IMG/VR virus record: IMGVR_UViG_3300042514_000542
Span: 62,001 to 126,000 of that record
Length of the DNA stretch: 64,000 nucleotides
Strand: one strand, 5' to 3'
The translations under genes and the position numbers were made by a program. A model generated the notes under the pieces. The model had not been told where the DNA came from. It ran no database searches and saw only the letters and a list, made by a program, of their open reading frames with translations. Within the stretch, counting starts at the first letter, position 1. The number at the start of each line of letters is the position of its first letter. Positions 4,903 to 43,469 of this stretch are shown here, piece after piece.

Positions 4903-5556
4903 TTAATAACCCCATGCTTTAAGGGTATGTTGGAATGGTTGTGATTCAATTCCTTTAACCAATTCAAGCATTTTGGTGGCGATATCATTGATTTCTTTTT
5001 GTGCGTGTTCGGATTTTCTAAGTTTTAGAAAGTTTGCAAAGCTTCTCATGTTAAAGGAAACGTCTCCTTGAATTTGCGAGTTATACGTCTTAAAGAATCG
5101 TGCTGATTCCTTTGCCCTCTTACGTCCAAGAATAGGCTCTAGGTCTTTGAGGCATTGATGATAGAGTCTATTAGATTCAATAGAAAAATCGTTCAATCTT
5201 TCAAGCCAAGTCATGTTTGGTGTCTCCCCATGAATATGGGAAATCTCTACATCCCAATCTTCTGGAAGATAATACTTATCCTCTTTAAGTTCTTTATACC
5301 TAGCAGACTCCGCATTCATGCTAGAGATACGATGCTTAAGTAAATGAATGTGACTGGCAATATCTGTATCTACTAGGAAGTGAACCATTCCTTTTTCGAA
5401 TGGTGTCTCATGCCCATTCTCCCATAACATCTTAATCAAATTGGGAACACGATTCTTCTTATCTTCGGTTAGTTCTCTTGAAGTGCTAGTCCATGCTGAA
5501 CATGCTATAACTTCGTCTGATCCATAGAATCCGATTAGTTCTACTTTATTATCCAT
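4903..5556 (-). CDS. thyX: flavin-dependent thymidylate synthase
   Basis: GHETPFE, HLLKHRISSMNAESARY, NMRSFANFLKLR..HAQKEI. Confidence 0.9.
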   Translation of the reverse strand: MDNKVELIGFYGSDEVIACSAWTSTSRELTEDKKNRVPNLIKMLWENGHETPFEKGMVHFLVDTDIASHIHLLKHRISSMNAESARYKELKEDKYYLPEDWDVEISHIHGETPNMTWLERLNDFSIESNRLYHQCLKDLEPILGRKRAKESARFFKTYNSQIQGDVSFNMRSFANFLKLRKSEHAQKEINDIATKMLELVKGIESQPFQHTLKAWGY

Positions 5557-5559
5557 ATA

Positions 5560-6036
5560 TTATTGATACTGATATGGTTTAACTTCTCTTGGAAGAGGAT
5601 CAGTAGCACCTTTGGGTAATGATCCGACATTAGTAAAGCTATAATTGATCTTGGACATAGCAGCATTGTATTCAGCGGCCAATGAGTTATAACTAGCAAT
5701 TACACCAGCAACTTCTTGTTCCCAAAGATTGAATTGTTCTTTGTCTGTCCTATCCCAATCCTTACGGGGAGTTCCCTCGTAACTACCTTCCATTGAAGCT
5801 AGACGAGCTTTATATACTTGAACATCTGCAAGTTTCTTATCACATTCGGCAGCAACATTCTTGAACCATTCATAACGTTTCAACAGAAGTCTTGGATCAA
5901 CTTGTTCTTCTGCAACAATAGATGCTTTACCGATCCATGCACATCCTTTACCAAGGACACTGAATGTAACCCATCCAACAATAAATGCCAGAACTAATGT
6001 TATAATTTTAAGTGTTTTCATATTATTGACTTTCAA
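5560..6036 (-). CDS. membrane-anchored hypothetical protein
   Basis: N-terminal hydrophobic helix followed by coiled coil. Confidence 0.65.
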   Translation of the reverse strand: MKVNNMKTLKIITLVLAFIVGWVTFSVLGKGCAWIGKASIVAEEQVDPRLLLKRYEWFKNVAAECDKKLADVQVYKARLASMEGSYEGTPRKDWDRTDKEQFNLWEQEVAGVIASYNSLAAEYNAAMSKINYSFTNVGSLPKGATDPLPREVKPYQYQ

Positions 6037-6568: not shown

Positions 6569-6659
6569 AGTTGAATTATAGTTCGGTTTTAATTAAGCAG
6601 ATTACGTTTTCGGTCTATGTTGAATACAGAGTTTATTATTTGCTGAGTGTAATCTTATC

Positions 6660-6785
6660 AAATCACATTTTTTGCTACGTGTCCTAGCCATTAGACGATA
6701 CCATCTTATATAGAATGCGATGGCAGCAGGATTCGAACCTACATCACGATCTTAACAGGATATGCATTATTTGCTGTTGTGATTT
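6660..6785 (-). ncRNA. array unit carrying a circularly permuted tRNA-Asn(GTT)-like module
   Basis: Order: ATC-CTGTTAA-GATCG anticodon arm, TGAT, T arm GTAGG-TTCGAAT-CCTGC, acceptor 3' TGCCATC-G, linker, acceptor 5' GATGGTA, D arm GTCT-AATGGCTA-GGAC. Confidence 0.7.
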
Positions 6786-7059
6786 TATTCAAGAGTCTAT
6801 TTCACTTTGCGGCAGACACATTATAAGTCTTCCTAAGAAGATTGTTATCGTTCGTCCCGTATCTGTTACATATCTATTACTAGACTTAGTTCCACTATCT
6901 ACCATCGCCGTATCGGTTTCCCGACTCTAACTACCTTAGTGCCGTTATTCAGTTCTCTATATGCTGTTAGACTCTTTTTATCAGATTTATTATTGTGGCA
7001 TCGAATCCACTAATGCTTACGCATATTATCCTTGTTGGTTTGCTGTAATAAATCTTTTC

Positions 7060-7200
7060 AAAATGCCATTGTTGTTTGGACTCCAGCGTTTACCAATTCC
7101 GCCATACCTCACATTATTAATAACTGTGGAGGCAGTAGGACTTGAACCTACAAGATTTTCATCGGGAGTTTTGCTTCCTTTTATTTGCTGTTAGCATTTT
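7060..7200 (-). ncRNA. array unit carrying a circularly permuted tRNA-Leu-like module (long variable arm, no intact anticodon loop)
   Basis: ACTCC, variable arm GAT-GAAA-ATC, T arm GTAGG-TTCAAGT-CCTAC, TGCCTC, loop, GAGGTA, D arm GCG-GAATTGGTAAA-CGC, GGAGT. Confidence 0.7.
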
Positions 7201-7206
7201 TATTAC

Positions 7207-7296
7207 AAATTCTGGCTATTCCTAGCTTATTTCCCTTGTTTATGTAGAGCGGGAAATATAAGAGTCGAACTTATTAGTAAGATGCGGACAGAATTT
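7207..7296 (-). ncRNA. array unit: minimal permuted tRNA mimic
   Basis: T arm ATAAG-TTCGACT-CTTAT, acceptor ATTTCCC/GGGAAAT closed by a loop, short D hairpin GCTA-GGAA-TAGC, closing stem AAATTCTG/CAGAATTT. Confidence 0.65.
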
Positions 7297-7957
7297 TATC
7301 AGAACATGTTTTTGGGAAACCGTTCCCTATTAAGGCGGGAGTCGAACCCTAGCCCCACTTAGTTTTGGTAGTGATTTATTATTTGCTGTTAATGTTCTTA
7401 TTCAGAAAAAGTGAAGATTAACTCCTATCTTAAGCTCCATATCACAACCTCTGATATGGTGAGGATACCCGCACGACTTTCATCGTTTTGCATATTTGCT
7501 TTTATTTTTGTTTTAGTTGCTGATACTTTTTCTTATACGATTGACGGATATGGAATCGAACCATTTTAGTTCCCTCGGGCCACCGACAGGTTATTTGATA
7601 TAATAATTGTTTTAGTTGCTGAAGTCAATCTATCAGAGGACGTTTTTATTTCAATTAACGTTTGATTTTATATATTTGCTGAATGTCCTCTTGTTATGGG
7701 ATTTCCGATTCGTCACCCACTATTCAGCCTTTTATATCTTTCGACACCGCTTGACTGAATCACTTATTGATCGTCTTAAATTTCGGATTACGTTTATTTT
7801 CAATAACAATGAATTTGGTTATTTGCTGATTGTAATCCTATATCAGATCGCGTTTTTTATTTCCAATAATAAGTTAATATTTGCTGAATACGATCTTGTT
7901 GATAGTTTTTATTATTTCGAACCGTAGAACTACCAAACTACTGAGATTCTTTTATGT

Positions 7958-7998
7958 CCTCTACTCATGTATTTAAACATAGAGTAGAGGTTTGTCAA
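7958..7998 (-). promoter_or_regulatory. candidate promoter of the RNA array inside an inverted repeat
   Basis: TTGACA (7993-7998), 17 nt, then TAAATA (7970-7975). The TAAATA is flanked by the perfect IR CCTCTACTC/GAGTAGAGG (7958-7966, 7982-7990). Confidence 0.5.
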
Positions 7999-8007
7999 CC
8001 ACGACAA

Positions 8008-9666
8008 TTAGATTTCAACCATATTGAGGATTTCTTGGTCTAGGGCAATGTTGATAAGATCATAAGTAGTCTTAATCTTACCACTTAGGAAGCTTACAGC
8101 ACTGGCTGAATATCCGCCCATATAATATACGTTCTGAACATCTTTACCAGTCTCAAACTTCTCACCAGTTCCTCGACCATATGCATTACTTTGAAGGTTC
8201 CAGAGAACAATCACAAAGTTATCTACATAAGCCTTGGAGAATCCAGCATTACGAAGTGTGTCTAGTGCCGCTTCAACATTAGTTCTACCTAGTGATGCTG
8301 GATTAAACTCTGAATCGGACACTGCTAGAATTCCACTAGGAAAATCTGATTCAGGTGTTCCCTCTCTCTTCATCTTAGCGAAAAGATTAATAACACTTTG
8401 GAAGTTAGTTCCACCATAAAAAGAAGACTTATCATTCTTCCACTTATCGACAGGTGTTTGACCAACCCATTTCCTAAGTTTAGCATCGGAATTGAATTCA
8501 ATCCAATGACCTGCAAAGGTTCCTTGTAGGAATTCACTGAAATATAGTGCTAGAGCTTTACCGACATTATAACAACTTGATTTAGTTCCCGGACATTGTG
8601 AAGACATGCTGCCGCTTACGTCTCTTACCACGATAAGATCAGTAACTTCGTTATCTCTTGCCTTTTGGACAAGTGTATCGAATTGCTTATTGATAGTTGC
8701 TTCCTTGTTCTTAACACCCATCCAAGAACCTTCAAAGAGTTCATGAACAAATCCAGTATACTTAACGTCCTTGGTTTCGGGTGCAGTAATCCATGCGGAA
8801 TACTTGTCACTAAGACCATGATTCTTAAGGAACTTGGACTTAACAAGAATCGACAATGCACGACCATGAATCTTATCAAACTCAAGTTCATTGAACTTAG
8901 CCTTAGAGATTAGCTTTTGCCAATCATGTGCGGTTCCACTGTTCTTAAGCTTACGATATTGCTTATAGGTAGAAGGGGTTTCCTTTTGTCCAAAGATCAA
9001 TGAGCAGATCCACTTAGCGATTGCATTGTTGGATTGTGCATCAATGGTAGTAGCTTGGCTACGTGCTTTGATTTGTGGGAGATACTTCTTCACAAGATCA
9101 CAAGTATTCTTGTTATGAAGTCCTGCAAGAATCAATTGACCAAACTTATCCCAATCAAGCTTACGGTTATTCCAACCATTATAGCTAAGGTCATATTGAA
9201 GCATGGTGAATACATCGTGCCACGATCCAAGAGATACAAACAATAGGATGTTATTCCAGAATGCTTGTGGAGACTTGTCATGTAGCCAAATCATACGCAT
9301 AATTGCTTCATGCTTAAGTTCAGTTCCCTTTTGAGGGGATTCAGTCTTAGTTCCATCAGGAAGATTAACCGTGCGAGGAATGGTTCTCATAAACAAGGCA
9401 AACTTAGTAGCCTTAAGAGGATCTTCACCCCACAACATTTCACAATCTTGTGCGATTTCAGAATACTTACGAGGAACTTTATACTTACCTGCTTTGGTGA
9501 ACTGGTCAGTTAGGGAATCACCAGAACTTGAAAATTTCTTAGCACCGTTACCTGAACGGGTTACATTTGATTGAGCCTTTGCATTATTTAGGAATGCATT
9601 AACTTCTCCACGGGTGACAGCTTTCTTAGTAGCTACGACTTCTGGTTTGCGTTTGTTTTCGAACAT
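8008..9666 (-). CDS. Ro60/TROVE-related helical-repeat plus vWA protein (DUF2828-like)
   Basis: N-terminal helical region (DPLKATKFALFMRTIPR, GSWHDV, KKYLP); C-terminal vWA with MIDAS VVRDVSGSM, GGTNFQSV, AVSDSEFN, VLWNL, GYSAS. Confidence 0.8.
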   Translation of the reverse strand: MFENKRKPEVVATKKAVTRGEVNAFLNNAKAQSNVTRSGNGAKKFSSSGDSLTDQFTKAGKYKVPRKYSEIAQDCEMLWGEDPLKATKFALFMRTIPRTVNLPDGTKTESPQKGTELKHEAIMRMIWLHDKSPQAFWNNILLFVSLGSWHDVFTMLQYDLSYNGWNNRKLDWDKFGQLILAGLHNKNTCDLVKKYLPQIKARSQATTIDAQSNNAIAKWICSLIFGQKETPSTYKQYRKLKNSGTAHDWQKLISKAKFNELEFDKIHGRALSILVKSKFLKNHGLSDKYSAWITAPETKDVKYTGFVHELFEGSWMGVKNKEATINKQFDTLVQKARDNEVTDLIVVRDVSGSMSSQCPGTKSSCYNVGKALALYFSEFLQGTFAGHWIEFNSDAKLRKWVGQTPVDKWKNDKSSFYGGTNFQSVINLFAKMKREGTPESDFPSGILAVSDSEFNPASLGRTNVEAALDTLRNAGFSKAYVDNFVIVLWNLQSNAYGRGTGEKFETGKDVQNVYYMGGYSASAVSFLSGKIKTTYDLINIALDQEILNMVEI

Positions 9667-9724: not shown

Positions 9725-9774
9725 GCGATTGGCTTGAACTTTCTTTTGTTGAAGCTATTGTATTTCGGTTTTAA

Positions 9775-10599: not shown

Positions 10600-10630
10600 A
10601 TCGTTATTATAGTTCGGTTTTAATTATGGT

Positions 10631-11401
10631 TCAAACATCCCACAGTCTAGCAAAGAATTCATCAAGTTCTTCTTTGGTTATCACGACCTTCTTACTAAAG
10701 ATATAATCATTGATATCATTATAGTTAGTTAAGTTGAAGTTTTCACCATTAACATAAGACCACCATGAACCATTCTTTTGTTGATCGGTGCATTCGGTAG
10801 CCCAATTATGTCCAATGTTGTGAAGCATTTCATGTTGATCGGCACGACCTTGACCATGTAGTTCTTTGGGTGAGAAGAATTGATTACAGAACATACTAAG
10901 ACTATTACGTTCCCAATCCTTTACTCTCCATAGGAAGACATTGGCAACATCATCTTTAGGACATTGGAATGCACGGGCATCAAAGATAGCAGGATTTGAA
11001 TCTGCAAAATCCCAAACGTTGAAGAATTGTTGATAATTTTTAATTACCCAATTCTTATTAAAGTATGCTGTCATCATTGCAGCAGTAACACTTTCAATCT
11101 TATTCTGTCTACCACCAAACCATTGTTGTGTTTCAATGGTATCACTATCATCCAATACAAATGTCACTTCATCACTTTGAGCATATAAGGCTTTACATCC
11201 TTGCATTTGTTTTGCTACCTCTTTAGCAGACTCAAACATACAAGTAATAAGTGTTTGATCGAAAGGTCTTTGACAACCCTTTGTGAACTGACTAAAGCAC
11301 TTGCCATCCACTCGTATAACTATAGGAATTTTAGGTAAGAAATAATTCTCACTTATAGATTCATATCGTTTTATTCTATCCCCCAAAGAGTCATTTTTCA
11401 T
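10631..11401 (-). CDS. tRNA(His) guanylyltransferase Thg1-like 3'-5' polymerase
   Basis: IVIRVDGKCFSQFT, YAQSDEVTF, FDARAF, WR..DW.RNS. Confidence 0.9.
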   Translation of the reverse strand: MKNDSLGDRIKRYESISENYFLPKIPIVIRVDGKCFSQFTKGCQRPFDQTLITCMFESAKEVAKQMQGCKALYAQSDEVTFVLDDSDTIETQQWFGGRQNKIESVTAAMMTAYFNKNWVIKNYQQFFNVWDFADSNPAIFDARAFQCPKDDVANVFLWRVKDWERNSLSMFCNQFFSPKELHGQGRADQHEMLHNIGHNWATECTDQQKNGSWWSYVNGENFNLTNYNDINDYIFSKKVVITKEELDEFFARLWDV

Positions 11402-12314
11402 AATTCCATTTATATCCTTTATGTGTTTGTCTTTTCCCTTTACAACAAGCTACGATAGCTGATGGATCAAATCCAGTCGATTTGATGCTATCCCATGTTT
11501 TAATATGGTTATCATTTAAATCCTTTTGTTCAACTCTTATCCTGTTGTTTACGGGTGTGAAATTTATATTATTATTCTTAAAGTAGTTTTTGATGCATTT
11601 TATAGGAACACCATATTTTTTGTAAAGCCTGTATATTGTATACTCTTCCGTTTTGAAATCTTTAACTATATCTAAATATTTTAAACTATGATCAATTGGT
11701 CCATCTTCATCAATTTTAGAATTTTTTAATTGTTTTATCTCCCACTTATGTTTGTATGATTCTACTGGACAGTCACCAATATAATTTAAAAAATGTTTAG
11801 CAAATATTCGTTTGATATATATTCTGTTATTGGTGAAGTTGATCCATGATTTCCATTCCTGTAATTGCCCATTTAGAAACTCTAAACTATCTTTATCGAA
11901 GGAATCTGTGCATAATTTAATATATCCATGACTCTTATCTAATGAACCATCACCAACATACCATAACAGAATTATAGTGTTTGTCAACTCTAAATCTTTC
12001 GGAACTATTTTAAGTCCTTCTGGATACCACACCATTCTAAGGTTGTAGAATGTTATGCTGCTCTTAGTTCTTATGCTATAATTTATATATGTCTTCTTTG
12101 TTCTCTTATCGTAAATTTCTCTTCTGATCGGACCATCTTTATATCTGGGAGATACCAAGTCTTTAAGTTGATTCCATACATACTCCACATGATCTAAATT
12201 ACTACTACCATACATGAAGCAAGAGCTTTTACCCTTTATAGATAAGCACCCATCACCTAATAAGCATCCTTGAATTACTTCTAATTCGTATTGTGTTAAA
12301 TTTATTACACTCAT
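11391..12314 (-). CDS. LAGLIDADG homing endonuclease with C-terminal NUMOD1-like tail
   Basis: IQGCLLGDGCL and WYVGDGS motifs; IVACCKGKRQTHKGYKW tail; start reassigned to ATG 12314, after ACTAAATAATAGT. Confidence 0.85.
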   Translation of the reverse strand: MSVINLTQYELEVIQGCLLGDGCLSIKGKSSCFMYGSSNLDHVEYVWNQLKDLVSPRYKDGPIRREIYDKRTKKTYINYSIRTKSSITFYNLRMVWYPEGLKIVPKDLELTNTIILLWYVGDGSLDKSHGYIKLCTDSFDKDSLEFLNGQLQEWKSWINFTNNRIYIKRIFAKHFLNYIGDCPVESYKHKWEIKQLKNSKIDEDGPIDHSLKYLDIVKDFKTEEYTIYRLYKKYGVPIKCIKNYFKNNNINFTPVNNRIRVEQKDLNDNHIKTWDSIKSTGFDPSAIVACCKGKRQTHKGYKWNYEK

Positions 12315-12425
12315 ACTATTATTTAGTGTAGAGTGTAACACTTTTCACATTTGGACATAAGAAAGTTCCAGATATAAGAACGGGTCTGGACTCCGCATGA
12401 AAAAGACTCTTACTGTCTATGTGAA

Positions 12426-13793: not shown

Positions 13794-15293
13794 TTAGAAG
13801 TGTTTTGCTACCCTCTCACGAATCTCTGCAAGCGTCCATTCTCGAATAATTTTCCCGTTGTTGAAGACTTCAACAAATTCACAATTAAGAACATCATCCC
13901 AAGTTGCCTGATCCTTTAGGTAAAATTCACCTTCAAGATCTTTATAGACTGCGAGCAATCCTTTAGCCGATTTCTTCATACCACTAGTATCAGTTTTAGG
14001 ATCTTTGTAAATTTCCACCAATTCTCCATTCTTAACACAAGCTGTAGCTTTACAAGCCCACCCATCAGTATCTCTTGTAACCATTTGATATGTAAAACTT
14101 CCGATACCCAAAACAAGATTAGTAGATGCGAAACCCTTAGCTTTAAGACCCTCGCAGATTCTTTCTGCTACCTCTAAAGTCACTCCATCACCAAGGATAG
14201 CACCAACCTTTTCGTGTAGGACTTTATAACCCTTATCATTAACAGTTCCCCCAAAAATATCCCATAGAAGTTCAACAGTTCCCAATCTTTCGGGACTACC
14301 TTCTGGAGCATCAGGATCACCAATGATAATTAGAACATTATCACCACTATCAGGTCTAAATACCGTTTTATTAACGAAGTGTCCTTCACGGGAAAGGATA
14401 GCCCTTTGCACATCTTCCTCTCTAAGAGTTACGTTTAGGAAAGACCAATAATCGTAGGTGTCAGAAACTAAGCTAACAATACCATAAGGTTGAACTTCAG
14501 TGATGATGTGAAGCATCATTTCCTTCTCGCTTTTATCTCCCCACGAAGAAACCACGCTATGCTCAGTTGCGCTCACACTACATCCGACTAATTCTTCATC
14601 CGAATTAGCATTGTAATACTCTTCGGCAAAGTCTACACCCCAAACAGTATCAGTTCCTACGAAGCTAGTTAAATGCCCCATATCTACTAATGCAGCAGCC
14701 TCGGTTCCCATACAACCACGGGCAGAAAAATTATGACCCTGAAAAGGAACAAATGTTTCGTCACCAGTTTCCTTAGCATATTTTTCAAGCAAGAGTCTAA
14801 ACTGATTTGCGGTAGTCGCAGAAGTAGATAAAGGCCAATAATTAGCACTAATAATAGTTTCAAGATAATTAGTTACCCAAAAGAAGTTTTCATCATTAGG
14901 TTTAGTATTCCAATATTGAAATGTCGGAACCTTATATGGAACCTTACTACCTTCAGGGAGAGCATATACTTGGATAGGTAGATACCCTAGATCATGTAAT
15001 GCTTCCATGTGCTTAGTTCCTACAACATTCTTCTCTCCCAAGTAGTTATTAACCCTTCTAGTAAAGCGTTTAATTACCTTTTCCTTTGGTTGATCAAAAA
15101 ATCCATTCCATTGGTTGATGAAAATCTCTTTAATAACATACTGCATACCTAGTGCAACTACATGTTTCGGAATGTTTTTTCGATAGGATTTTCTAGGAGT
15201 TCCATTACTCACTACTTGTTCGGTATCTGGGTGATAAGCGTTCTTATGGAACATTTTATACCCATCAATTTGTGTTTCAGCGTTGTTTTGCAT
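13794..15293 (-). CDS. nadV: nicotinamide phosphoribosyltransferase-like (Nampt/Namat family)
   Basis: IDGYKMFH, YLETI, HNFSARG, HLTSFVGTDT, ATEHSV, SLVSDTYD, RPDSGD, ILGDGVT, KDPKTD..KKSAKG. Confidence 0.9.
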   Translation of the reverse strand: MQNNAETQIDGYKMFHKNAYHPDTEQVVSNGTPRKSYRKNIPKHVVALGMQYVIKEIFINQWNGFFDQPKEKVIKRFTRRVNNYLGEKNVVGTKHMEALHDLGYLPIQVYALPEGSKVPYKVPTFQYWNTKPNDENFFWVTNYLETIISANYWPLSTSATTANQFRLLLEKYAKETGDETFVPFQGHNFSARGCMGTEAAALVDMGHLTSFVGTDTVWGVDFAEEYYNANSDEELVGCSVSATEHSVVSSWGDKSEKEMMLHIITEVQPYGIVSLVSDTYDYWSFLNVTLREEDVQRAILSREGHFVNKTVFRPDSGDNVLIIIGDPDAPEGSPERLGTVELLWDIFGGTVNDKGYKVLHEKVGAILGDGVTLEVAERICEGLKAKGFASTNLVLGIGSFTYQMVTRDTDGWACKATACVKNGELVEIYKDPKTDTSGMKKSAKGLLAVYKDLEGEFYLKDQATWDDVLNCEFVEVFNNGKIIREWTLAEIRERVAKHF

Positions 15294-15346: not shown

Positions 15347-16135
15347 ATGAAGTATTCAAAAGAAGAGGAATCATTTATTATTGAGAACTACCCCAAATTC
15401 GGTGCGACTTATTGTAGTTCGGTTTTAATTAATAGAGATGTAGAAGCTGTCGGAGCTAAAGCTAGACGAATGGGATTGCGACATGAAAGCAATTTTAAAC
15501 ATCCATCATTATGTAAAAATTTTTCTATAGACATAATTGAAAATCCGACAAAAGAGTTTGCATACTTATTGGGGTTCTTATGGGCAGATGGATATATTTT
15601 AAAAAAGATTGATAAGAAAGGATTCAACCATAATAGAATTGTGTGTGAGATAGTGTCCGATGATTTTGATATGATATGGAATAATTTTAAAGATTTTAGT
15701 AAGTGGTCTGTTAGTAAAAGAAAAAGAAGAGAGAATTGGAAGGAAACCAAAACTGCGACCATTAACAATAAATATCTTTACGAATTTCTAGAATCTTTAG
15801 GTTTCAAATCTAAGCTTGAAGGATTCGATAAAGTATTTAAATACCTCCAGAAATTCAATCTTATTGATTATTTTATATGTGGATTATTTGATGGTGATGG
15901 ACATACTGATTTTAAAAAATTAATAGAATTATCATCTTCCATTTCCCAGAATTGGAAATCCATTGAAGAAATATTTAAAATTAATAACATTTCATACGGT
16001 CTTTATTATTACAAACATCCTACTAAAAACCATTCTGCATCCATTATTAAGATTCAAAATATTGAAGGTTTTAACTGGTTCAATAAAAACTTTCTTAAAA
16101 ATGATATAGGTTTAAAAAGAAAGAGACTTAATTAA
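15347..16135 (+). CDS. LAGLIDADG homing endonuclease, antisense to the surrounding operon
   Basis: AYLLGFLWADGY and FICGLFDGDGH; preceded by ACTAAATAATAGT-ATG. Confidence 0.85.
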   Translation: MKYSKEEESFIIENYPKFGATYCSSVLINRDVEAVGAKARRMGLRHESNFKHPSLCKNFSIDIIENPTKEFAYLLGFLWADGYILKKIDKKGFNHNRIVCEIVSDDFDMIWNNFKDFSKWSVSKRKRRENWKETKTATINNKYLYEFLESLGFKSKLEGFDKVFKYLQKFNLIDYFICGLFDGDGHTDFKKLIELSSSISQNWKSIEEIFKINNISYGLYYYKHPTKNHSASIIKIQNIEGFNWFNKNFLKNDIGLKRKRLN

Positions 16136-16621: not shown

Positions 16622-17542
16622 TCATAGCTCAATTTTCATGCACACAACTCTCTCATCATGTGGATAGAAGTATTTGGTAGTCCAATTTTGTTTGGAATTT
16701 GTGGTATAAACCTTATCAAAATGCTCAGATACGTTTTTGATGCCATCATAGCAATCAGAGTGTGTGGTGAATAACATAAGCTTGCCACAATTCTTTTCAC
16801 GAAGTTTCTTACCAAGGCCAATGAATGTTCCACCCATCGAATTAATATCATCGCAGATAAGTGTAGGATGACCACCTAGATCATCAGCACCTACGAAGAA
16901 CTCCTTAATAGAACCATCCTTGACATCACGAACTTTCTCACAACGAATTAGGTTGAATGTCTTAGCGTGATACATGCAAGCAAGGTATTGTGTAATCTTA
17001 CCTACGCGCTTTCCAGCACCAGCATCAGGACATACGATATTCCATTCCTTTTGGTTGACATCGCTTTGAATGATTTGATCAATATATTTCAATTCATCAA
17101 GAACAATAACATTGTTAAGCAATGCTGGAGTCACTTCACTATGAGGACAAAGGATAGTAACACTGTTGAATCCACAACCATTAATCATATCAGTAAAGAC
17201 CTTAATGGTTAATGGTTCACCTTCATTACATACGCGGTCTTGACGAGCGGCGGGAAAGTATGGAAGAATAAGTCTAATGTCATTAAAACCCATACGACGA
17301 GCAGCATCATTTGCCAGAATAATATCAAACAAATCGCCAATCTTATTATATCGTTGAGTGATTACCAGAGTAGATGCTTCTGGACATGCACATTTGTTAG
17401 TAATCTGAAAGTGCGGCTCCCCGCCTTTGAAGTCAAATTTCTTATAGAATACCTCAACACCCTCGAAAGGTGCGAAGGTTTCATCTAGGTTTAAAACGTA
17501 TGGTCGTTCTGCTTTCATGTTCCAATGTATATGCTGCTTCAT
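16622..17542 (-). CDS. prs: ribose-phosphate pyrophosphokinase-like (Prs/Adps family)
   Basis: FKGGEPH, LPYFPAARQDR, CPHS, VCPDAGA, CEKVRD, ICDDINSMGGTF. Confidence 0.9.
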   Translation of the reverse strand: MKQHIHWNMKAERPYVLNLDETFAPFEGVEVFYKKFDFKGGEPHFQITNKCACPEASTLVITQRYNKIGDLFDIILANDAARRMGFNDIRLILPYFPAARQDRVCNEGEPLTIKVFTDMINGCGFNSVTILCPHSEVTPALLNNVIVLDELKYIDQIIQSDVNQKEWNIVCPDAGAGKRVGKITQYLACMYHAKTFNLIRCEKVRDVKDGSIKEFFVGADDLGGHPTLICDDINSMGGTFIGLGKKLREKNCGKLMLFTTHSDCYDGIKNVSEHFDKVYTTNSKQNWTTKYFYPHDERVVCMKIEL

Positions 17543-23393: not shown

Positions 23394-24176
23394 TTAAATT
23401 TTACACCATTTCCTGTCCATTTTAGGAACATCAATAGACAACAGTTTATTTCTCAAATAGATATACTTTCCAGTCTTTAAATTACCACCAAAAGATAGCT
23501 TATATACCATATTTGTATTTTTGATTTTTTTAATCGTGGTATCTATATTACAATAACTAGAAAACACGTTCTTTATAAATTGTAAAATATCACATGTCCC
23601 AATAATGGTAATAATTTGATTTCCATGGCTAGAAGCGATACAACCATCTCCATCTATATACCCTATTATATAGGCCAAAGCATGATTAACTGTTGGTATG
23701 TTTTCTGGCGGTTTAATCGTCGCCGTCTTATTCTGAGTAATGTTAAATCTATTAACTAATGTATTAACAATATCTGGAACCCCGGTGAATTCACATCCGA
23801 CATATTTTCCACCACCTCTAAAATAAAGTGGGCCATCATATTTAAAGTGTTCTTTTAACAGATTAACTGTCTTTAAATCTCTAGAGTGTAGCGTTAAACG
23901 AACCCTATTATTGGCTTCATCAATACATCCATCTGCTGCTAACAACCCAACCAAATACCAAGTCGTCAGATCATCATTATCGAAAGCCTTCTGATCTATA
24001 TTATATCTTGAGCCTTTACGTTTACCATTTCTTTTACTTTTACGCACACCAATATCTAAAATAGATCTACAAGATTTACATTGGGAAGTGTAAAGGTTTT
24101 TACTTTTTGATCTTTTATAAAAAGATTCTAATGGTTTAGTTTCTTTACAGGTTGTGCAGGTTTTGTTGTTAGTCAT
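23394..24176 (-). CDS. LAGLIDADG homing endonuclease with N-terminal Cys4 zinc finger
   Basis: CTTCKE..CKSC, WYLVGLLAADGCI, AYIIGYIDGDGCI; start reassigned to ATG 24176, after ACTAAATAATAGT. Confidence 0.85.
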   Translation of the reverse strand: MTNNKTCTTCKETKPLESFYKRSKSKNLYTSQCKSCRSILDIGVRKSKRNGKRKGSRYNIDQKAFDNDDLTTWYLVGLLAADGCIDEANNRVRLTLHSRDLKTVNLLKEHFKYDGPLYFRGGGKYVGCEFTGVPDIVNTLVNRFNITQNKTATIKPPENIPTVNHALAYIIGYIDGDGCIASSHGNQIITIIGTCDILQFIKNVFSSYCNIDTTIKKIKNTNMVYKLSFGGNLKTGKYIYLRNKLLSIDVPKMDRKWCKI

Positions 24177-24715
24177 ACTATTATTTAGTGTGATCAACAA
24201 CAAAACCCAAACTAACCACCTTAGAATGTAGTAATTTTAGAATTTCTCAATTCACAGGCAATGTCTCTTGTATCAACATTAACCCATACGCCCATAAATT
24301 GGTTTTTCCTAATGAACACCTGTTGTTGTCCACCAATCAAATGAAAACTCCCATCTGCGTTTCTAACTGCTGTTAAGTTAAAAACTTTAGGTGATTTTAA
24401 TTGATCCTTATTACGCATCCATCGTTTGTCTCTTTTTGTCTTTGTCATACTTATATGTTTTTATTTTTTATACCGGGACCATTGAGAAGAAAGTCTTCCA
24501 CTTCCATCATATTGATTTCATCATCAACCTCTTCCTTAAGTTTACCCAATTCCTTGAATAATTTATCGAGATTTTCGATGCTGTTTGTAGTAACATCGAA
24601 ATTACTAATATCTGATATCAACTTGTTGGTTTTTTGTTTCAACTGTTCTATTCTGCCACCCGATTCTTGTTCTTTGTTCACTGTCATAAAGAATCTATCA
24701 CACCAAAACGCTTTG

Positions 24716-27023: not shown

Positions 27024-28259
27024 TTATTTTACTTCTAATAGATATTTGATTCTGATTTGATTTCCATTATAGACAATCAATTCGTCATTTAGGAAAGATG
27101 TGTTTTGTGGCAATGCCCAGCAGGAATCATATCCAGATGGTAATTGACTGAAAGTATGTTTTGTATAGTAAGGATTACCCATCACGAAGTCACAGATAAA
27201 TAACCACCCACTATCACCCTTACCTTGACCCCATCTACCTAGAGTATACCCTAAACTTTTTGATGCTGTTTCAGATCCGTAAGTCCCGTTTCCAAAGGCT
27301 TTTCCGGCTATAGCGACAGTAGATGGTGGACTAGGTTGTAGACCACTTTTTAAAATACTGAGAATATTTGCGGAAGAACTTCCATGCCACACTTCCTTAA
27401 CATTCACCGGATTCTTCACAAAGTTAGCATTGTAATCCACAATGTCAACCTCATAAATGTTGATAATTTTAACATGTTGATAATGATGCATTGGTTTATT
27501 CGTGCTATTATACCAATCTTGAATTTTCTTAATAACCTTGGGATCAGTCACCAGAGACATATTGAGATTGAATACCTTTTCAGTAGAAGGTTTAGTGGCA
27601 TCAACAGGTGCTTTAAGTGCCATTTCAACACTGTTATCAAGAGCGTCCAATACATCAGATTCCTTCTTAACTACATCAACATTTGGAAAGATATTCTCAT
27701 ATAATAATCCACCACCCTTTGGTCTTGGGATGATCTTAAGATAATCATCAATTTTTTGATTGAAATCATCCTGACCATTCTTCTTAATGTTTTTGAAGAA
27801 GTAATCGAGTAGAATACGTGCCTCTGAGATACCCTCTTTGGTTACGATACCCAAGGGGGTTTGGAATACACCGTTATTGAAACTAATACTAGTTGAGTTG
27901 GTGATCTTATGGACATTGCTATCTGCAAGTCTCTTAACAAGAGTCTTAAGACTACTATCCGATAACTTAATTTGTGATAAGGCGATATCCGCCAATGACG
28001 TATTAGCAATAACCTTATTGGTTACAGCACCTTCCATTAGGACTTTAGCATGAGTATAACCCTTACGTTCCTTCTCACGGATTTTCTTATCAAAAAATGA
28101 CTTACCAACACATCCGAAATCCTTTGATTGTGGGTTCTTTGCCCCAACTACACCAAATTCCGCCATAACTCTTCCGTCGTCATGTAATTCGGCTTGCCAA
28201 AACTTATATGAGTTAGCTTTTAAGTCTGAGAAAACGAGCTTTACTTTTTCTTTTATCAT
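27024..28259 (-). CDS. WGR-domain PARP-like ADP-ribosyltransferase
   Basis: N-terminal WGR-like region (SYKFW..EFGVVG); catalytic WHGS..N..SIL..GL, G.AFG.G.YG, NDELIVY. Confidence 0.85.
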   Translation of the reverse strand: MIKEKVKLVFSDLKANSYKFWQAELHDDGRVMAEFGVVGAKNPQSKDFGCVGKSFFDKKIREKERKGYTHAKVLMEGAVTNKVIANTSLADIALSQIKLSDSSLKTLVKRLADSNVHKITNSTSISFNNGVFQTPLGIVTKEGISEARILLDYFFKNIKKNGQDDFNQKIDDYLKIIPRPKGGGLLYENIFPNVDVVKKESDVLDALDNSVEMALKAPVDATKPSTEKVFNLNMSLVTDPKVIKKIQDWYNSTNKPMHHYQHVKIINIYEVDIVDYNANFVKNPVNVKEVWHGSSSANILSILKSGLQPSPPSTVAIAGKAFGNGTYGSETASKSLGYTLGRWGQGKGDSGWLFICDFVMGNPYYTKHTFSQLPSGYDSCWALPQNTSFLNDELIVYNGNQIRIKYLLEVK

Positions 28260-37414: not shown

Positions 37415-38266
37415 TTATTCAAAATCGCGGATACTATGGATAAAGGGAAATCTGGGAATTTGCTTATCAGGTGTCTTATTAAAGAAAACCACAGTAGCCA
37501 ATTTACCAATGTAGTTATCCTTGTTATCTAACAGTTCTTTAAGGTATGCTCTATCACCTTTAATATTGGAATTGAAACTATGTCCAAGTTCGTTTTCAAA
37601 AACCATAGCACCTGCAAGCCCCGCACGATTTCCAACACCTTCCACAATATCAAGAATCTTATACTCTTCATCTTGGAATTCTTTCCTCTTAAGAAGATTA
37701 GCAGAACGCTTGAATTCATACGGTGTATCGAGTCGAACCATTTGACCCTCATAACCTCTATCAAGATATGCACCATAAACTTTATCTAAGGTTTCAAGAT
37801 CATCAATTCTTTGTGTAGTTACTCTAACAATACAATCGGGAAGATTAAAATTTTCTTTGATTGTTTTGATCCAATTTTTACGTTGTCTAAAAGTGTGTTT
37901 ATCACTGGCAGTATCATACCACCAGAATTGAACCATTTCGGCACTTTCCACCAAATCATCTTTGGTCGGTTTTTGCTTCTTAATCAAAGATGACATTTTG
38001 TTGAAGTCATGCTTCAAATCGTGGTTGTATAATTCACCATCAAGGATCAAATCTGGATACTTTTCAAATACGGGTTCCAGTGCTTCAAGAATATGTGGAA
38101 TAGTTGCCCAAGGTTTACCATTACGAGACTTTGCCCCATTACGAGTAATCACCGCTCGACAATTATGAACTAATATATCATTAGCGTAGAAGTTATGATT
38201 ATCTTCTACTTCTATATCATATCGATCATAAAAATCTTCTAATTTTTCTATCTTAACAATTTTCAT
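37415..38266 (-). CDS. lig: ATP-dependent DNA ligase C-terminal part, preceded by a 35-aa split intein C-fragment
   Basis: MKIVKIEK..YDIEVEDNHNFYANDILVHN|C (intein blocks F/G), then SRNGK, LDGELY, YEGQM, KRK, PRFP. Confidence 0.9.
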   Translation of the reverse strand: MKIVKIEKLEDFYDRYDIEVEDNHNFYANDILVHNCRAVITRNGAKSRNGKPWATIPHILEALEPVFEKYPDLILDGELYNHDLKHDFNKMSSLIKKQKPTKDDLVESAEMVQFWWYDTASDKHTFRQRKNWIKTIKENFNLPDCIVRVTTQRIDDLETLDKVYGAYLDRGYEGQMVRLDTPYEFKRSANLLKRKEFQDEEYKILDIVEGVGNRAGLAGAMVFENELGHSFNSNIKGDRAYLKELLDNKDNYIGKLATVVFFNKTPDKQIPRFPFIHSIRDFE

Positions 38267-42441: not shown

Positions 42442-42482
42442 ATTTTTTGTAGATTATGGTGTGTGATAGGTTAAATATATTT

Positions 42483-43469
42483 ATGCGAAAGTCAAAAATT
42501 AGTTTAGCAGATGAAGAAGCGATTGTCAATCAGTATTTAAAGGAAAAAAATGTAGAAAAATTAAGATCTAAATATAAAACATCATTTAAAGATATTAAAA
42601 ATATTCTAATTAAAAATAATATATATTCAGGTAGAAGATCAACTTCATTGAATTTAAAATATTTTGAAAATATAGATAGTAATGAAAAAGCTTATTGGTT
42701 AGGATTTATTTCGGCTGATGGATCTTTGTCTAAAAATGGGTATAAATTATCCTTTGGTGTTAAGGATTCTGATATATTAGAAAAATTTAAAAGAGCCATA
42801 TCATCTGGAAGCCCTGTATCAGATTTCAACGTATATGATGAGAGGACAGATAAAACTTACAATAGATATAGTCTTCAGATATGTTCTAAAGAATTTTGCC
42901 AATATATAAGAAATCATGGAGTTGATGAAAACAAGTCAAAAGTATTCAAATTCCCAAAGATTGATGAGAAATATTACTCCCATTTTATTAGAGGGTTATA
43001 TGACGGTGATGGTAGTATATGTATAGTCAAATCCAAGGTTATAGAGAATATCAACTTTAGGGCAAATATTATAAGTTCTTTGGAGTGTGTTAACTACATT
43101 AAAGTTTATTTAGAAAGCATCAATATCTCATCTAATAAAATATTTTCCAAACACGACCAAAATATTCACTATATTACATTTGGAAAGGACGTTATTAAAT
43201 TTTTAAATTGGATTTATAAAGACTCATCCGAAGAAACTAGGTTGGATAGAAAATACAATAAATTTATCGATAATCTACATGATTATAATACCCAACATAA
43301 GATTTTTCAAATTAAAAATCATCAAACCGGAGTTACACATAAAGTTAAGAATTTGATTAAATTCTGTAAAGATAATAATTTAAACGATAATTACTTGAGG
43401 TATAATATGACTAATGGAAAAATTCCAACAAAAGGTAAGCACTTAGGATGGGAATTATTACCCAATTAA
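42483..43469 (+). CDS. LAGLIDADG homing endonuclease, antisense orientation
   Basis: AYWLGFISADG and HFIRGLYDGDG; start reassigned to ATG 42483, after TAAATATATTT. Confidence 0.85.
   Translation: MRKSKISLADEEAIVNQYLKEKNVEKLRSKYKTSFKDIKNILIKNNIYSGRRSTSLNLKYFENIDSNEKAYWLGFISADGSLSKNGYKLSFGVKDSDILEKFKRAISSGSPVSDFNVYDERTDKTYNRYSLQICSKEFCQYIRNHGVDENKSKVFKFPKIDEKYYSHFIRGLYDGDGSICIVKSKVIENINFRANIISSLECVNYIKVYLESINISSNKIFSKHDQNIHYITFGKDVIKFLNWIYKDSSEETRLDRKYNKFIDNLHDYNTQHKIFQIKNHQTGVTHKVKNLIKFCKDNNLNDNYLRYNMTNGKIPTKGKHLGWELLPN

What the first reader, a model, noticed from the sequence alone, without database searches (positions are those of the whole stretch)
6660..6785. A complete tRNA-Asn(GTT) can be rebuilt from one unit, circularly permuted at position 28/29
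The unit starts at tRNA position 29 (ATC-CTGTTAA-GATCG-TGAT-T arm-TGCCATC-G73), passes an ~11-nt linker, then gives positions 1-28 (GATGGTA..D arm..A-CG). Joining 28 to 29 restores a perfect CGATC/GATCG anticodon stem with a canonical C-U-GUU-A-A loop, and G73 is the Asn discriminator. Established: permuted tRNA genes in red algae and archaea mature through a circular intermediate. Inference: this is either a Y RNA that keeps an anticodon decoy or a cryptic tRNA matured by handle excision and phage RNA ligase.
Basis: partly seen in the sequence, partly recalled or inferred. Interest (0 to 1): 0.75.

Follow-up and report, generated by a model that had tools for sequence, protein, structure and literature searches.

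The report
Phage Y-RNA-like permuted tRNA mimic
Right after a Ro60-like protein gene, a lake-water jumbo phage carries a row of small structured RNAs on a common 'handle'; this one is a complete tRNA-Asn look-alike in circularly permuted order, most likely a tRNA mimic rather than a hidden working tRNA, and the same unannotated RNA family also occurs in Felix O1-type coliphages.

Summary
On the minus strand, 6785..6660 is one RNA unit: an 8-bp closing stem, the motif ACAGCAAAUAA, then tRNA positions 29-73, a 12-nt linker, positions 1-28, an A-rich linker and the closing stem. Joining 28 to 29 gives a canonical tRNA-Asn(GUU) cloverleaf.

It is not a one-off. It is unit 12 of 13 abutting units in the 1.4-kb gap downstream of a 552-aa protein. 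That protein carries DUF2828/DUF7788 domains and belongs to PHROG 850; its predicted fold is Ro60/TROVE+vWA.

Related phages keep the gene-then-array order (82 model hits downstream, 4 upstream). Of the 44 best distinct units, 20 keep a full anticodon arm with U33 and R37, broken after nt 26, 28 or 29. Shuffled flanks give 0.78. At least 14 anticodons occur.

Best reading: a Y-RNA-like (YrlA-type) tRNA mimic that partners the Ro60-like protein. The cryptic-tRNA reading is unlikely:
- The genome has no EndA or RtcB.
- A canonical tRNA-Asn(GTT) lies elsewhere in it.
- The break site varies between units.
- Relatives cap the acceptor with 1-5-nt loops.
- Family members depart from real tRNAs (A32, non-G1).

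Expression could not be tested. The family also occurs, unannotated, in the cultured Leptolyngbya phage Lbo-JY46 and in about 250 Felix O1-like phage records.

The parts
6660..6785 (-). Unit 12 of the array: handle-embedded, circularly permuted complete tRNA-like RNA (Asn GUU-type). This is the finding.
   Evidence: Covariance model R1 scores it 97.9 bits, E 2e-17. An ortholog lies in L085/L086.
6778..6785 (-). Closing stem, 5' strand (AAATCACA). It pairs with 6660-6667.
   Evidence: The closing stem has compensatory changes at all 8 pairs across the family.
6767..6776 (-). Conserved handle motif CAGCAAAUAA, single-stranded, directly 3' of the closing-stem strand.
   Evidence: Seven of the 10 minus-strand genome copies of CAGCAAATA lie in the array. 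The motif is invariant in alignments A2/A3.
6747..6761 (-). Anticodon-arm element. ATC (29-31), loop CTGTTAA (32-38, anticodon GTT at 6756-6754) and GAT (39-41) form the local hairpin. The next two bases, CG (42-43), pair with C27 G28 at 6679-6678.
   Evidence: It is identical in the ortholog. Homologous units covary here: ACC/GGT, AGC/GCT, TCC/GGA, ACA/TGT, GC/GC.
6726..6742 (-). T arm GTAGG-TTCGAAT-CCTGC.
   Evidence: RNAalifold predicts it. In L085, G64 is A, turning U.G into U-A.
6699..6725 (-). Acceptor stem closed into a hairpin: TGCCATC (66-72), G73, 12-nt linker CATTCTATATAA, GATGGTA (1-7).
   Evidence: There are 7 bp with compensatory changes across the family. C follows N73 in 10 of 13 units.
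6678..6698 (-). U8 C9, D arm GTCT-AATGGCTA-GGAC, A26, C27 G28.
   Evidence: The run A26-C27-G28-U is conserved in many units.
6660..6677 (-). 3' A-rich linker TAGCAAAAAA and closing stem 3' strand TGTGATTT.
   Evidence: GCA here can pair with TGC at 6766-6764, and L085 has the compensatory TAC/GTA.
6599..7896 (-). Array of 13 abutting units, 4-6 nt apart, with a 3' tail GAUA(AG).
- U1 7896-7845.
- U2 7838-7785.
- U3 7760-7722 (atypical).
- U4 7691-7635.
- U5 7630-7539.
- U6 7533-7404.
- U7 7398-7301.
- U8 7296-7207 (permuted tRNA-like, no CAGCAA motif).
- U9 7200-7060 (permuted tRNA-like, open 5-bp anticodon stem).
- U10 7055-6983.
- U11 6976-6791.
- U12 6785-6660.
- U13 6655-6599.
   Evidence: Model R1 also hits 7060-7200 (50 bits) and 7301-7398 (29.5 bits). 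No full-length unit lies elsewhere in the genome.
7967..7999 (-). Candidate sigma-70-type promoter of the array: TTGACA, 17 nt, TAAATA, overlapping an inverted repeat. The TTGACA is conserved at this place in relatives.
   Evidence: Sequence reading. The consensus scan did not list it, so this is inference only.
8008..9666 (-). Ro60-like protein, 552 aa (DUF2828/DUF7788, PHROG 850 'RNA-binding protein'), with an invariant MIDAS motif DxSxS (D349, S351, S353).
   Evidence: Foldseek places Ro60/TROVE on top (E 7e-8). VIA-align gives Z 13-16.4 over 375-428 residues. AFDB Swiss-Prot returns Ro60 of 5 species and telomerase p80.
10631..11401 (-). Thg1-like 3'-5' nucleotidyltransferase, a tRNA 5'-end repair type. 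It also lies upstream of the Ro60-like gene in close relatives.
   Evidence: Pfam PF04446, 2.8e-30. Neighbours in L085-L087.

Best explanation
The unit is one cassette of a phage array of small non-coding RNAs. All cassettes share a 'handle': a 7-10-bp closing stem, the single-stranded motif ACAGCAAAUA on the 5' side, an A-rich stretch on the 3' side and a GAUAAG tail. Each carries a variable cargo.

Here the cargo is a complete tRNA body.
- The acceptor stem is closed by a 12-nt loop.
- The handle leaves sideways from a nick-like three-way junction between nt 28 and 29 of the anticodon stem.
- So the L-shape and a canonical GUU anticodon loop are both displayed.

Most likely it works like a bacterial Y RNA of the YrlA type. 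The handle would be bound by the Ro60-like protein encoded immediately upstream. The tRNA-shaped module would engage proteins that recognise tRNAs: host anticodon nucleases or other tRNA-targeting defence enzymes, RNase P, the CCA-adding enzyme, modification or repair enzymes. It would act as a decoy or a tether inside the phage's tRNA-repair gene set.

Shown: the structure, family membership, covariation, gene linkage and the protein fold. Inferred: that the RNA is expressed, that it binds the protein, and its decoy or tether role. It is probably not a decoding tRNA.
For: Structure and conservation:
- The anatomy is verified base by base.
- RNAalifold on a plain MAFFT alignment of 11 units recovers the closing stem, T arm, acceptor and D arm; 21 of 24 pairs have compensatory changes.
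- On 87 model-aligned distinct units, 92.7% of cells are paired against 56.1% in shuffles and 38-47% when partners are slid. The covariation score is 0.547 against 0.138, reached by 0 of 500 shuffles.
- G-U pairs are frequent, which fits RNA of this strand.

The anticodon arm is a family feature:
- 20 of 44 distinct units have 5 bp, a 7-nt loop, U33 and R37, against 0.78 +/- 0.86 in shuffles.
- The hairpin strands covary and 14 different anticodons occur.

Link to the protein:
- 82 model hits lie downstream of the gene and 4 upstream; none lies on the other strand; 37 of 42 loci have a hit.
- Within this genome, full-length units occur only here.

The protein has the Ro60/TROVE+vWA fold and belongs to PHROG 850 'RNA-binding protein'.

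The architecture matches YrlA:
- The order is Ro site, V, T arm, capped acceptor, D arm (PMC4201824).
- Rfam YrlA scores 38, 33 and 30 bits (E 4e-5 to 8e-3) on units of relative L094.

Context: a Thg1-like gene, three ATP-dependent RNA ligases, a kinase and a CCA-adding-type enzyme lie in the same genome.

Arguments for a mimic rather than a decoder:
- A32 occurs in 6 of 13 units against 2 of 75 canonical tRNAs of these phages. G1 occurs in 2 of 13 against 43 of 75. The 1:72 pair is mismatched in 3 of 13.
- Acceptor loops are only 1-5 nt in Felix-type and other units.
- Many cassettes have no tRNA cargo at all.
Against: - There is no expression data. No RNA run could be listed, and the DNA runs laid did not cover the unit.
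- Binding to the Ro60-like protein is inferred from synteny only.
- The protein resembles Ro60 only at fold level: 10-15% identity, TM about 0.5, no sequence-profile hit and no Pfam TROVE hit.
- The handle lacks the known Ro-binding motifs (GNCGAAN0-1G, or a bulged helix).
- Rfam YrlA scores only 15 bits on this unit and stays below gathering score everywhere.
- Thermodynamic folding alone does not give the permuted cloverleaf: -18 to -19 kcal/mol against an MFE of -27.7, z-score -1.24.
- This particular unit is fully tRNA-like (C32, U33, A37, G1-C72, G73, a 12-nt linker beginning CA), so processing or charging of this copy is not excluded.
- In some more distant relatives another ORF lies between the gene and the RNA.
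Confidence: 0.6

Rival explanations
1. Cryptic permuted tRNA gene. RNase P and 3' processing open the acceptor loop, the handle is cut away, and a phage RNA ligase seals nt 28 to nt 29 (possibly through a circular intermediate). The product is a working tRNA-Asn.
For: - The rebuilt molecule is a flawless tRNA-Asn(GUU) with G73.
- The phage has three ATP-dependent RNA ligases, a kinase and a CCA-adding-type enzyme.
- C follows N73 in 10 of 13 units.
- Anticodon loops are canonical in length, U33 and R37.
- M. smegmatis YrlA is cut by RNase P and receives CCA in vivo (PMC4201824).
- A nick in a duplex is the substrate type of Rnl2-like ligases (general knowledge).
Against: - The complete genome has no tRNA splicing endonuclease and no RtcB.
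- There is no bulge-helix-bulge at the break.
- The break follows nt 26, 28 or 29. The 5' and 3' linkers vary over 15-21 nt (two outliers 31 and 35) and 2-15 nt, so no ruler for precise excision is visible.
- A canonical tRNA-Asn(GTT) already exists at genome 24561-24633.
- A32 is enriched and G1 depleted relative to the phages' real tRNAs.
- Relatives have acceptor loops of 1-5 nt.
- Orthologous handles carry different anticodon arms.
- Cassettes without tRNA cargo share the same handle.
Confidence: 0.07
2. Y-like RNA that is opened but not re-joined. [quoted passage not shown] The result is a two-chain, possibly aminoacylatable tRNA held on the handle, and this processed form is the active one.
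For: - The acceptor stem is a perfect 7 bp with G1-C72 and G73, and the 12-nt linker begins with CA.
- C74 is conserved in 10 of 13 units.
- A phage CCA-adding-type enzyme is present.
- There is a precedent in PMC4201824.
Against: - Many family members have linkers too short (1-5 nt) or far too long (67-130 nt), or a mismatched 1:72 pair.
- There is no direct evidence of ends.
Confidence: 0.12
3. The handle is a general processing, stability or display scaffold for diverse small RNAs and works without the Ro60-like protein. The cargoes could be tRNA decoys for host tRNA-targeting defences, antisense loops or other mimics. The gene linkage would then reflect only a shared tRNA-related neighbourhood.
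For: - Cargoes are very diverse, including none.
- Arrays merge with canonical tRNA clusters in L008, L010, L039 and Felix-type phages.
- Cassettes are gained and lost between strains.
- The handle resembles Dictyostelium Class I RNAs, which bind an RRM protein.
Against: The order and strand of gene and RNA are conserved over protein identities from 93% to about 40%. This matches the rule for Ro60 and Y RNAs, which lie within 4 kb on the same strand.
Confidence: 0.15
4. Chance or debris: a decayed junction of two tandem tRNA genes that happens to look like a permuted tRNA.
For: - Junctions of tandem canonical tRNAs give weak hits to the unit model (22-28 bits).
- With a free junction, ARAGORN rebuilds almost anything.
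Against: - The full model scores 97.9 bits.
- All helices covary.
- The ortholog shows stem-preserving changes.
- The strict test gives 20 of 44 against 0.78 expected.
Confidence: 0.02

Closest known systems
Bacterial and phage Y RNAs of the YrlA type (Rfam RF02553; Chen et al. 2014, PMC4201824)
   Same: - Encoded next to, and on the same strand as, a Ro60-type protein.
- The 5' and 3' ends pair.
- There is a tRNA-like module in the order V, T arm, capped acceptor stem-loop, D arm.
- tRNA tertiary nucleotides are kept.
- Rfam YrlA gives significant sub-threshold hits on relatives' units.
   Different: - The handle motif is ACAGCAAAUA, not GNCGAAN0-1G.
- Up to 13 cassettes abut in one array instead of 1-2 genes.
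- A complete anticodon arm with a canonical loop is retained, and the handle leaves from inside the anticodon stem.
- The protein is DUF2828/DUF7788, not Pfam TROVE.
Deinococcus radiodurans Yrn1
   Same: A Y RNA whose tRNA-like part can be drawn with an 'anticodon arm' of 5 bp.
   Different: In Yrn1 the loop has 6 nt, the arm order differs and the D arm is doubtful. Here the loop has 7 nt with U33 and R37, and the whole cloverleaf is present.
Thermus phage phiLo Ro60 with Yrl1/Yrl2 (PMC12135203; PDB 9KOP, 9L5Y)
   Same: A phage-encoded Ro60-fold protein with phage-encoded partner RNAs nearby. It is the best structural match of the protein here.
   Different: phiLo has two RNAs with a CGAA motif upstream of the gene. 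No tRNA mimicry or array was described for it.
Circularly permuted tRNA genes of Cyanidioschyzon merolae and some archaea
   Same: The 3' half is encoded before the 5' half, the acceptor ends are joined by a short linker, and permutation restores a full cloverleaf.
   Different: Those genes mature through a bulge-helix-bulge cut by the splicing endonuclease, followed by ligation to a circle (general knowledge). Here there is no BHB, no EndA and no RtcB, the break position varies, and a canonical isoacceptor is present.
Two-piece tmRNA from circularly permuted ssrA genes (alpha-proteobacteria, some cyanobacteria; general knowledge)
   Same: A bacterial tRNA-like domain encoded in permuted order, whose linking loop can be excised to leave two base-paired chains without ligation.
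   Different: tmRNA is aminoacylated and carries a tag reading frame. Here no ORF or tag module is present and the acceptor is probably left capped in many members.
Dictyostelium Class I RNAs (Rfam RF01414; PMC7919456)
   Same: - A short closing stem starting GAU.
- CAGCAA directly after the 5' strand; this covers C6, C9, A10 and A11, four of the five near-invariant positions of the 11-nt motif.
- An A-rich run before the 3' strand.
- A CUG tail.
- The short cassettes score up to 30.9 bits here and 39.3 bits in Leptolyngbya phage (gathering score 41.5). In the 64-kb window such hits occur only in the array.
   Different: - All hits are below the gathering score.
- Class I RNAs are eukaryotic, separately transcribed and bound by an RRM protein.
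- No evolutionary link has been shown.

Membership tests
Y RNA / YrlA-like RNA | Encoded within a few kb of, and on the same strand as, a Ro60 (TROVE+vWA) protein gene. | tested here: met
   The array starts about 110 nt after the stop of the 552-aa protein and lies on the same strand. The protein's fold is Ro60/TROVE+vWA. The synteny gives 82 hits downstream against 4 upstream. The protein is not a Pfam TROVE member.
Y RNA / YrlA-like RNA | The 5' and 3' ends form a stem that encloses the rest. | tested here: met
   The closing stem has 8 bp, and all 8 pairs show compensatory changes.
Y RNA / YrlA-like RNA | Conserved Ro-binding sequence (GNCGAAN0-1G, or the metazoan bulged helix). | tested here: not met
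   A different conserved motif, ACAGCAAAUA, stands at the equivalent place. No CGAA-type motif is present.
Y RNA / YrlA-like RNA | tRNA-like module with T arm, D arm and an acceptor-like stem-loop. | tested here: met
Y RNA / YrlA-like RNA | Reaches the Rfam RF02553 gathering score (69 bits). | tested here: not met
   This unit scores 15.4 bits. Relatives' units score 30-38 bits.
Y RNA / YrlA-like RNA | Physically bound by the Ro60 protein. | not testable with these tools
   Needs immunoprecipitation or gel shift.
Circularly permuted tRNA gene (red-algal/archaeal type) | The 3' half precedes the 5' half, and permutation restores the full cloverleaf. | tested here: met
Circularly permuted tRNA gene (red-algal/archaeal type) | Bulge-helix-bulge motif formed by leader and trailer at the junction. 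| tested here: not met
   The flanks of the break are A-rich single strands. At most a 3-bp helix lies 2 nt away.
Circularly permuted tRNA gene (red-algal/archaeal type) | Splicing endonuclease and RtcB-type ligase available. | tested here: not met
   PF01974 and PF01139 are absent from the complete phage genome, and the controls were positive. The host is unknown.
Circularly permuted tRNA gene (red-algal/archaeal type) | Circular intermediate and a mature, aminoacylated tRNA. | not testable with these tools
   No RNA run was listed.
Canonical tRNA gene | Contiguous cloverleaf detected by tRNA finders. | tested here: not met
   ARAGORN finds 0 genes in the window. Rfam tRNA scores 16.3 bits against a gathering score of 29.
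Dictyostelium Class I RNA (RF01414) | Reaches the gathering score of 41.5 bits. | tested here: not met
   The best score is 30.9 bits in the window and 39.3 bits in L095.

The most novel reading that the evidence does not exclude
The anticodon-bearing cassettes are genuine permuted pre-tRNAs. [quoted passage not shown] This would give conditionally activated working tRNAs, a bacterial-virus counterpart of red-algal and archaeal permuted tRNAs that uses different enzymes.
Probability: 0.07. Interest if true: 0.9.

Novelty: new variant of a known kind. Interest (0 to 1): 0.68.

Why it matters
Y RNAs that mimic tRNAs are known, but three things here go beyond them.

- A whole tRNA, including a canonical anticodon loop, is displayed from a side-exit handle. 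At least 14 different anticodons are seen across phages. That points to a function which reads the anticodon arm, for example decoying or recruiting tRNA-targeting enzymes in the phage-host arms race.
- The RNAs come as modular arrays of up to 13 cassettes on one conserved handle. This is a new organisation for Ro60-associated RNAs.
- The partner protein family (DUF2828/DUF7788, PHROG 850) is widespread: 510 cultured phage records match it at E 1e-5 or better. That count mixes families by organism name. Felix O1-like and cyanophage records were checked here; the Listeria, Campylobacter and Mycobacterium records were not, and some of them may be canonical Ro60.

The RNA family is unannotated even in about 250 Felix O1-like genomes, where spurious ORFs are sometimes called over it. 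A function for this protein family and these RNAs can therefore be tested directly in E. coli, Salmonella and Leptolyngbya systems.

Tried and rejected
- I first thought the 'anticodon loop' CUGUUAAG was just a copy of the inter-unit junction motif, which is CUGAUAAG and reads CUGUUAAG in L021/L032. I rejected this as a general explanation: homologous units carry unrelated, canonical anticodon loops at the same place.
- ARAGORN on rebuilt sequences with a free junction choice cannot serve as a statistic, because 53 of 61 cores pass. A strict geometric test with shuffled flanks replaced it.
- Single-sequence MFE folding does not recover the structure and its z-score is not significant.
- Expression evidence was not obtainable. 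No RNA run was listed. The four lake-metagenome DNA runs laid did not cover 6658-6804.
- Megablast against cultured phages found nothing; only protein-level and model-based searches did.
- A sequence-profile search of PDB did not find Ro60. NCBIfam gave no hit.
Burroughs & Aravind 2016 is not held, so prior mention there cannot be excluded.
- Whether Dictyostelium has a DUF2828 protein could not be checked, because organism names were blanked.
Full report
**Observation**

The feature lies on the minus strand. Read 5' to 3' from 6785 to 6660, it is a 126-nt unit:
- an 8-bp closing stem, AAATCACA with TGTGATTT;
- the motif ACAGCAAAUAA and a 5-nt linker;
- tRNA positions 29-73: ATC, the loop CTGTTAA, GATCG, a 4-nt variable region, the T arm, TGCCATC and G73;
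- a 12-nt linker;
- positions 1-28: GATGGTA, TC, the D arm, A26 and CG;
- an A-rich 10-nt linker.

ARAGORN and Rfam at gathering score see nothing in the native order. Once the 5' part is placed before the 3' part, ARAGORN calls tRNA-Asn(gtt). All usual tertiary nucleotides are present.

**Is it more than chance?**

A free search over junctions is too permissive: 53 of 61 permuted cores can be 'rebuilt'. I therefore required a 5-bp anticodon stem, a 7-nt loop, U33 and R37, with fixed geometry relative to the D and T arms. I compared the result with shuffles of the 5' flank.
- 13 of 31 cores pass, against 0.54 +/- 0.71 expected.
- On the units found by a covariance model, 20 of 44 pass, against 0.78 +/- 0.86 expected, with a maximum of 5 in 1000 shuffles.

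A single unit passes by chance about 2% of the time. As a family feature it is far beyond chance.

**Surroundings**

The window is part of a complete 206.6-kb phage genome of 35% GC from lake water.

The unit is cassette 12 of 13 in the 1.4-kb non-coding stretch 7896-6599. The cassettes abut, 4-6 nt apart. Each has a closing stem of different sequence and an A-rich 3' linker, and most carry CAGCAA(A/C)UA and a GAUA(AG) tail. Their cargoes differ:
- none (U1, U2, U4, U13);
- partial tRNA-like elements (U5, U7, U10);
- permuted tRNA-like bodies (U8; U9 with an open 5-bp anticodon stem; U12);
- larger conserved RNAs (U6, U11).

Directly upstream on the same strand lies a 552-aa protein (8008-9666).
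- It carries DUF7788, and its relatives also carry DUF2828.
- It matches PHROG 850 'RNA-binding protein'.
- Its AlphaFold model (pLDDT 79.6) matches Ro60/TROVE structures over nearly the full length. Foldseek gives E 7e-8 to 1e-4. VIA-align gives Z 13-16.4 over 375-428 residues, well above the vWA-only matches at Z 9.7 or less. In AFDB Swiss-Prot, Ro60 of five species and telomerase p80 come out on top.
- Sequence profiles do not see the relationship.

The genome also encodes a Thg1-like enzyme two genes upstream, three ATP-dependent RNA ligases, a P-loop kinase, a CCA-adding-type enzyme, a PARP-like protein and NAD-salvage enzymes. It has no splicing endonuclease and no RtcB. Its 23 canonical tRNAs lie elsewhere and include tRNA-Asn(GTT).

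**Relatives**

Homologs of the protein are numerous: 1524 reach E 1e-3 or better. I fetched 80 viral loci and several metagenome contigs.

The same kind of array follows the gene in these loci. RNAalifold on a plain alignment of 11 units predicts the closing stem, T arm, acceptor and D arm, and 21 of 24 pairs have compensatory changes.

A covariance model built with the proposed structure gave these results:
- It finds 89 units in 43 sources, all on the gene's strand.
- 82 lie downstream of the gene and 4 upstream, and 37 of 42 loci have a hit.
- In this genome it finds full-length units only in the array.
- On the model-fitted alignment, 92.7% of cells are paired against 56% in shuffles and 38-47% with slid partners. 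That alignment leans towards the structure, so the independent RNAalifold result and my position-defined counts matter more.

The closest relative (protein 93% identical, L085/L086) has an ortholog of the finding.
- Its anticodon element is identical.
- It carries stem-preserving changes in the T stem and the acceptor stem.
- It has a compensatory G:C to A:U change in a 3-bp helix that lies 2 nt from the break on both sides.

Homologous units in more distant phages keep the same design with other hairpin sequences and other anticodons: AUU, CUU, CAU, GUC, UAU, UUC, UUU, UGU, UGA, UCA, CAG and CUG. The break follows nt 26, 28 or 29.

**Cultured phages**

The protein family occurs in 510 cultured phage records.
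- Leptolyngbya phage Lbo-JY46 (44% identity) has the same handle array right after the gene.
- In Felix O1-like phages the gene heads the canonical tRNA cluster. The cluster contains handle cassettes, including a permuted tRNA-like unit with a full anticodon arm (66 bits).
- That unit is present in 252 records, mostly unannotated or overlapped by doubtful ORFs.
- In SUSP2 and ESh19 its loop reads CUGGUAA, and the acceptor is closed by a very short loop with compensatory stem changes.

**What it most likely is**

The order (handle, V, T arm, capped acceptor, D arm, handle), the position next to a Ro60-fold gene on the same strand, and the tRNA mimicry are those of YrlA-type Y RNAs (PMC4201824). 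Rfam's YrlA model gives significant though sub-threshold hits on relatives' units.

I therefore read the unit as a Y-RNA-like tRNA mimic. Its handle is the probable binding site of the Ro60-like protein. Its tRNA body, here including a real anticodon arm, engages tRNA-recognising factors.

The decoy or tether role is inference. It is suggested by the tRNA-repair gene context, the diversity of anticodons on otherwise orthologous handles, and cassette turnover between strains.

**Why not a hidden working tRNA**

- No EndA, RtcB or BHB is present.
- Break sites and linker lengths vary.
- The unit is redundant with a canonical tRNA-Asn.
- A32 occurs in 6 of 13 units against 2 of 75 canonical tRNAs. 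G1 occurs in 2 of 13 against 43 of 75. Some 1:72 pairs are mismatched.
- Several members have acceptor loops of 1-5 nt.
- Cassettes with no tRNA cargo share the same handle.

The window's own copy is nevertheless fully canonical, and M. smegmatis YrlA is known to be cut by RNase P and CCA-tailed. An 'opened' form is therefore a live sub-variant.

**Limits**

- No transcript evidence could be obtained.
- Protein binding is inferred.
- The promoter assignment upstream of the array (TTGACA, 17 nt, TAAATA) rests on my reading and on conservation, not on the scan.
- Literature searches found no prior description, but the library is incomplete.

**Verdict**

This is a new variant of a known kind (Y-RNA-like tRNA mimics), with new features: a side-exit handle, a retained anticodon arm, modular arrays and a non-TROVE-annotated Ro60-like partner. 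Cultured systems are available to test it.

Noticed in passing
window 7845-7896, 7635-7691, 6599-6655; L095 5234-5291: The short 'empty' cassettes resemble Dictyostelium Class I RNAs (RF01414): a GAU stem, CAGCAA, an A-rich run and a CUG tail. They score up to 30.9 bits here and 39.3 bits in Leptolyngbya phage (gathering score 41.5). In the 64-kb window such hits occur only in the array. Class I RNAs are described as unique to Dictyostelia.
   Followed up: partly
window, 35 sites, e.g. 6575-6592, 9757-9774, 10606-10623 (all minus strand): A phage-specific promoter-like motif, TTAAAACCGAACTATAAT, sits just upstream of many ORFs. There are 35 matches against 0.18 expected. It is also seen upstream of genes in related contigs and as a repeated element in lake metagenome contigs.
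   Followed up: partly
genome 23941-24013 (outside the window): ARAGORN calls a tRNA with anticodon CTA (amber-reading) among the 23 canonical tRNAs. Whether TAG is recoded in this phage was not examined.
   Followed up: no
window 7205-7402; L085: Cassette-level presence/absence variation. A lake-metagenome contig joins 7205 to 7402, and the 93%-identical relative lacks U7-U8 but has extra cassettes and a GIY-YIG gene inserted before the last cassette.
   Followed up: partly
window 6791-6976 (U11), 7404-7533 (U6), 7539-7630 (U5): Larger cargoes are conserved in several related phages (L005, L087, L021, L032, L095). It is unknown what these structured RNAs are. U5 has a T arm preceded by a conserved GC-rich element.
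   Followed up: no
L096 4720-5535 (Enterobacteria phage UAB_Phi87, NC_027360.1): Felix O1-like phages carry at least four handle cassettes between canonical tRNA genes. Small hypothetical CDS are annotated on the opposite strand at or next to this region (5373-5630 overlaps two cassettes) and are probably spurious.
   Followed up: partly
L032 5990-6100: One cassette carries a non-permuted tRNA-like cargo: D arm, anticodon arm and T arm in normal order, with the acceptor stem replaced by the handle (Rfam tRNA 52.6 bits, model positions 6-65). Both topologies therefore occur in the family.
   Followed up: no
L040 5806-6208: A tmRNA gene (Rfam 52.8 bits) lies directly after the array in one related phage contig.
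   Followed up: no
window 11391-12341, 15347-16135(+), 23394-24203, 42456-43469(+), 37415-38266: There are four LAGLIDADG homing-endonuclease-like ORFs. A DNA ligase ORF begins with an intein-splicing-domain remnant, and the preceding ORF has a Vsr-like endonuclease hit. This suggests split or invaded genes.
   Followed up: no
window 27024-28259: A phage PARP-like protein (WGR, PARP regulatory and PARP catalytic domains) lies next to an Rnl1-type RNA ligase. NAPRTase and PRPP-synthetase genes lie nearby (13794-15293, 16622-17542).
   Followed up: no
L055, L061, L072, about 5600-5900: In more distant relatives (protein about 44% identical) the gene is followed by another ORF. After that comes a single permuted tRNA-like RNA with a different handle and a 21-130-nt insert in the acceptor loop, and then canonical tRNAs.
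   Followed up: partly
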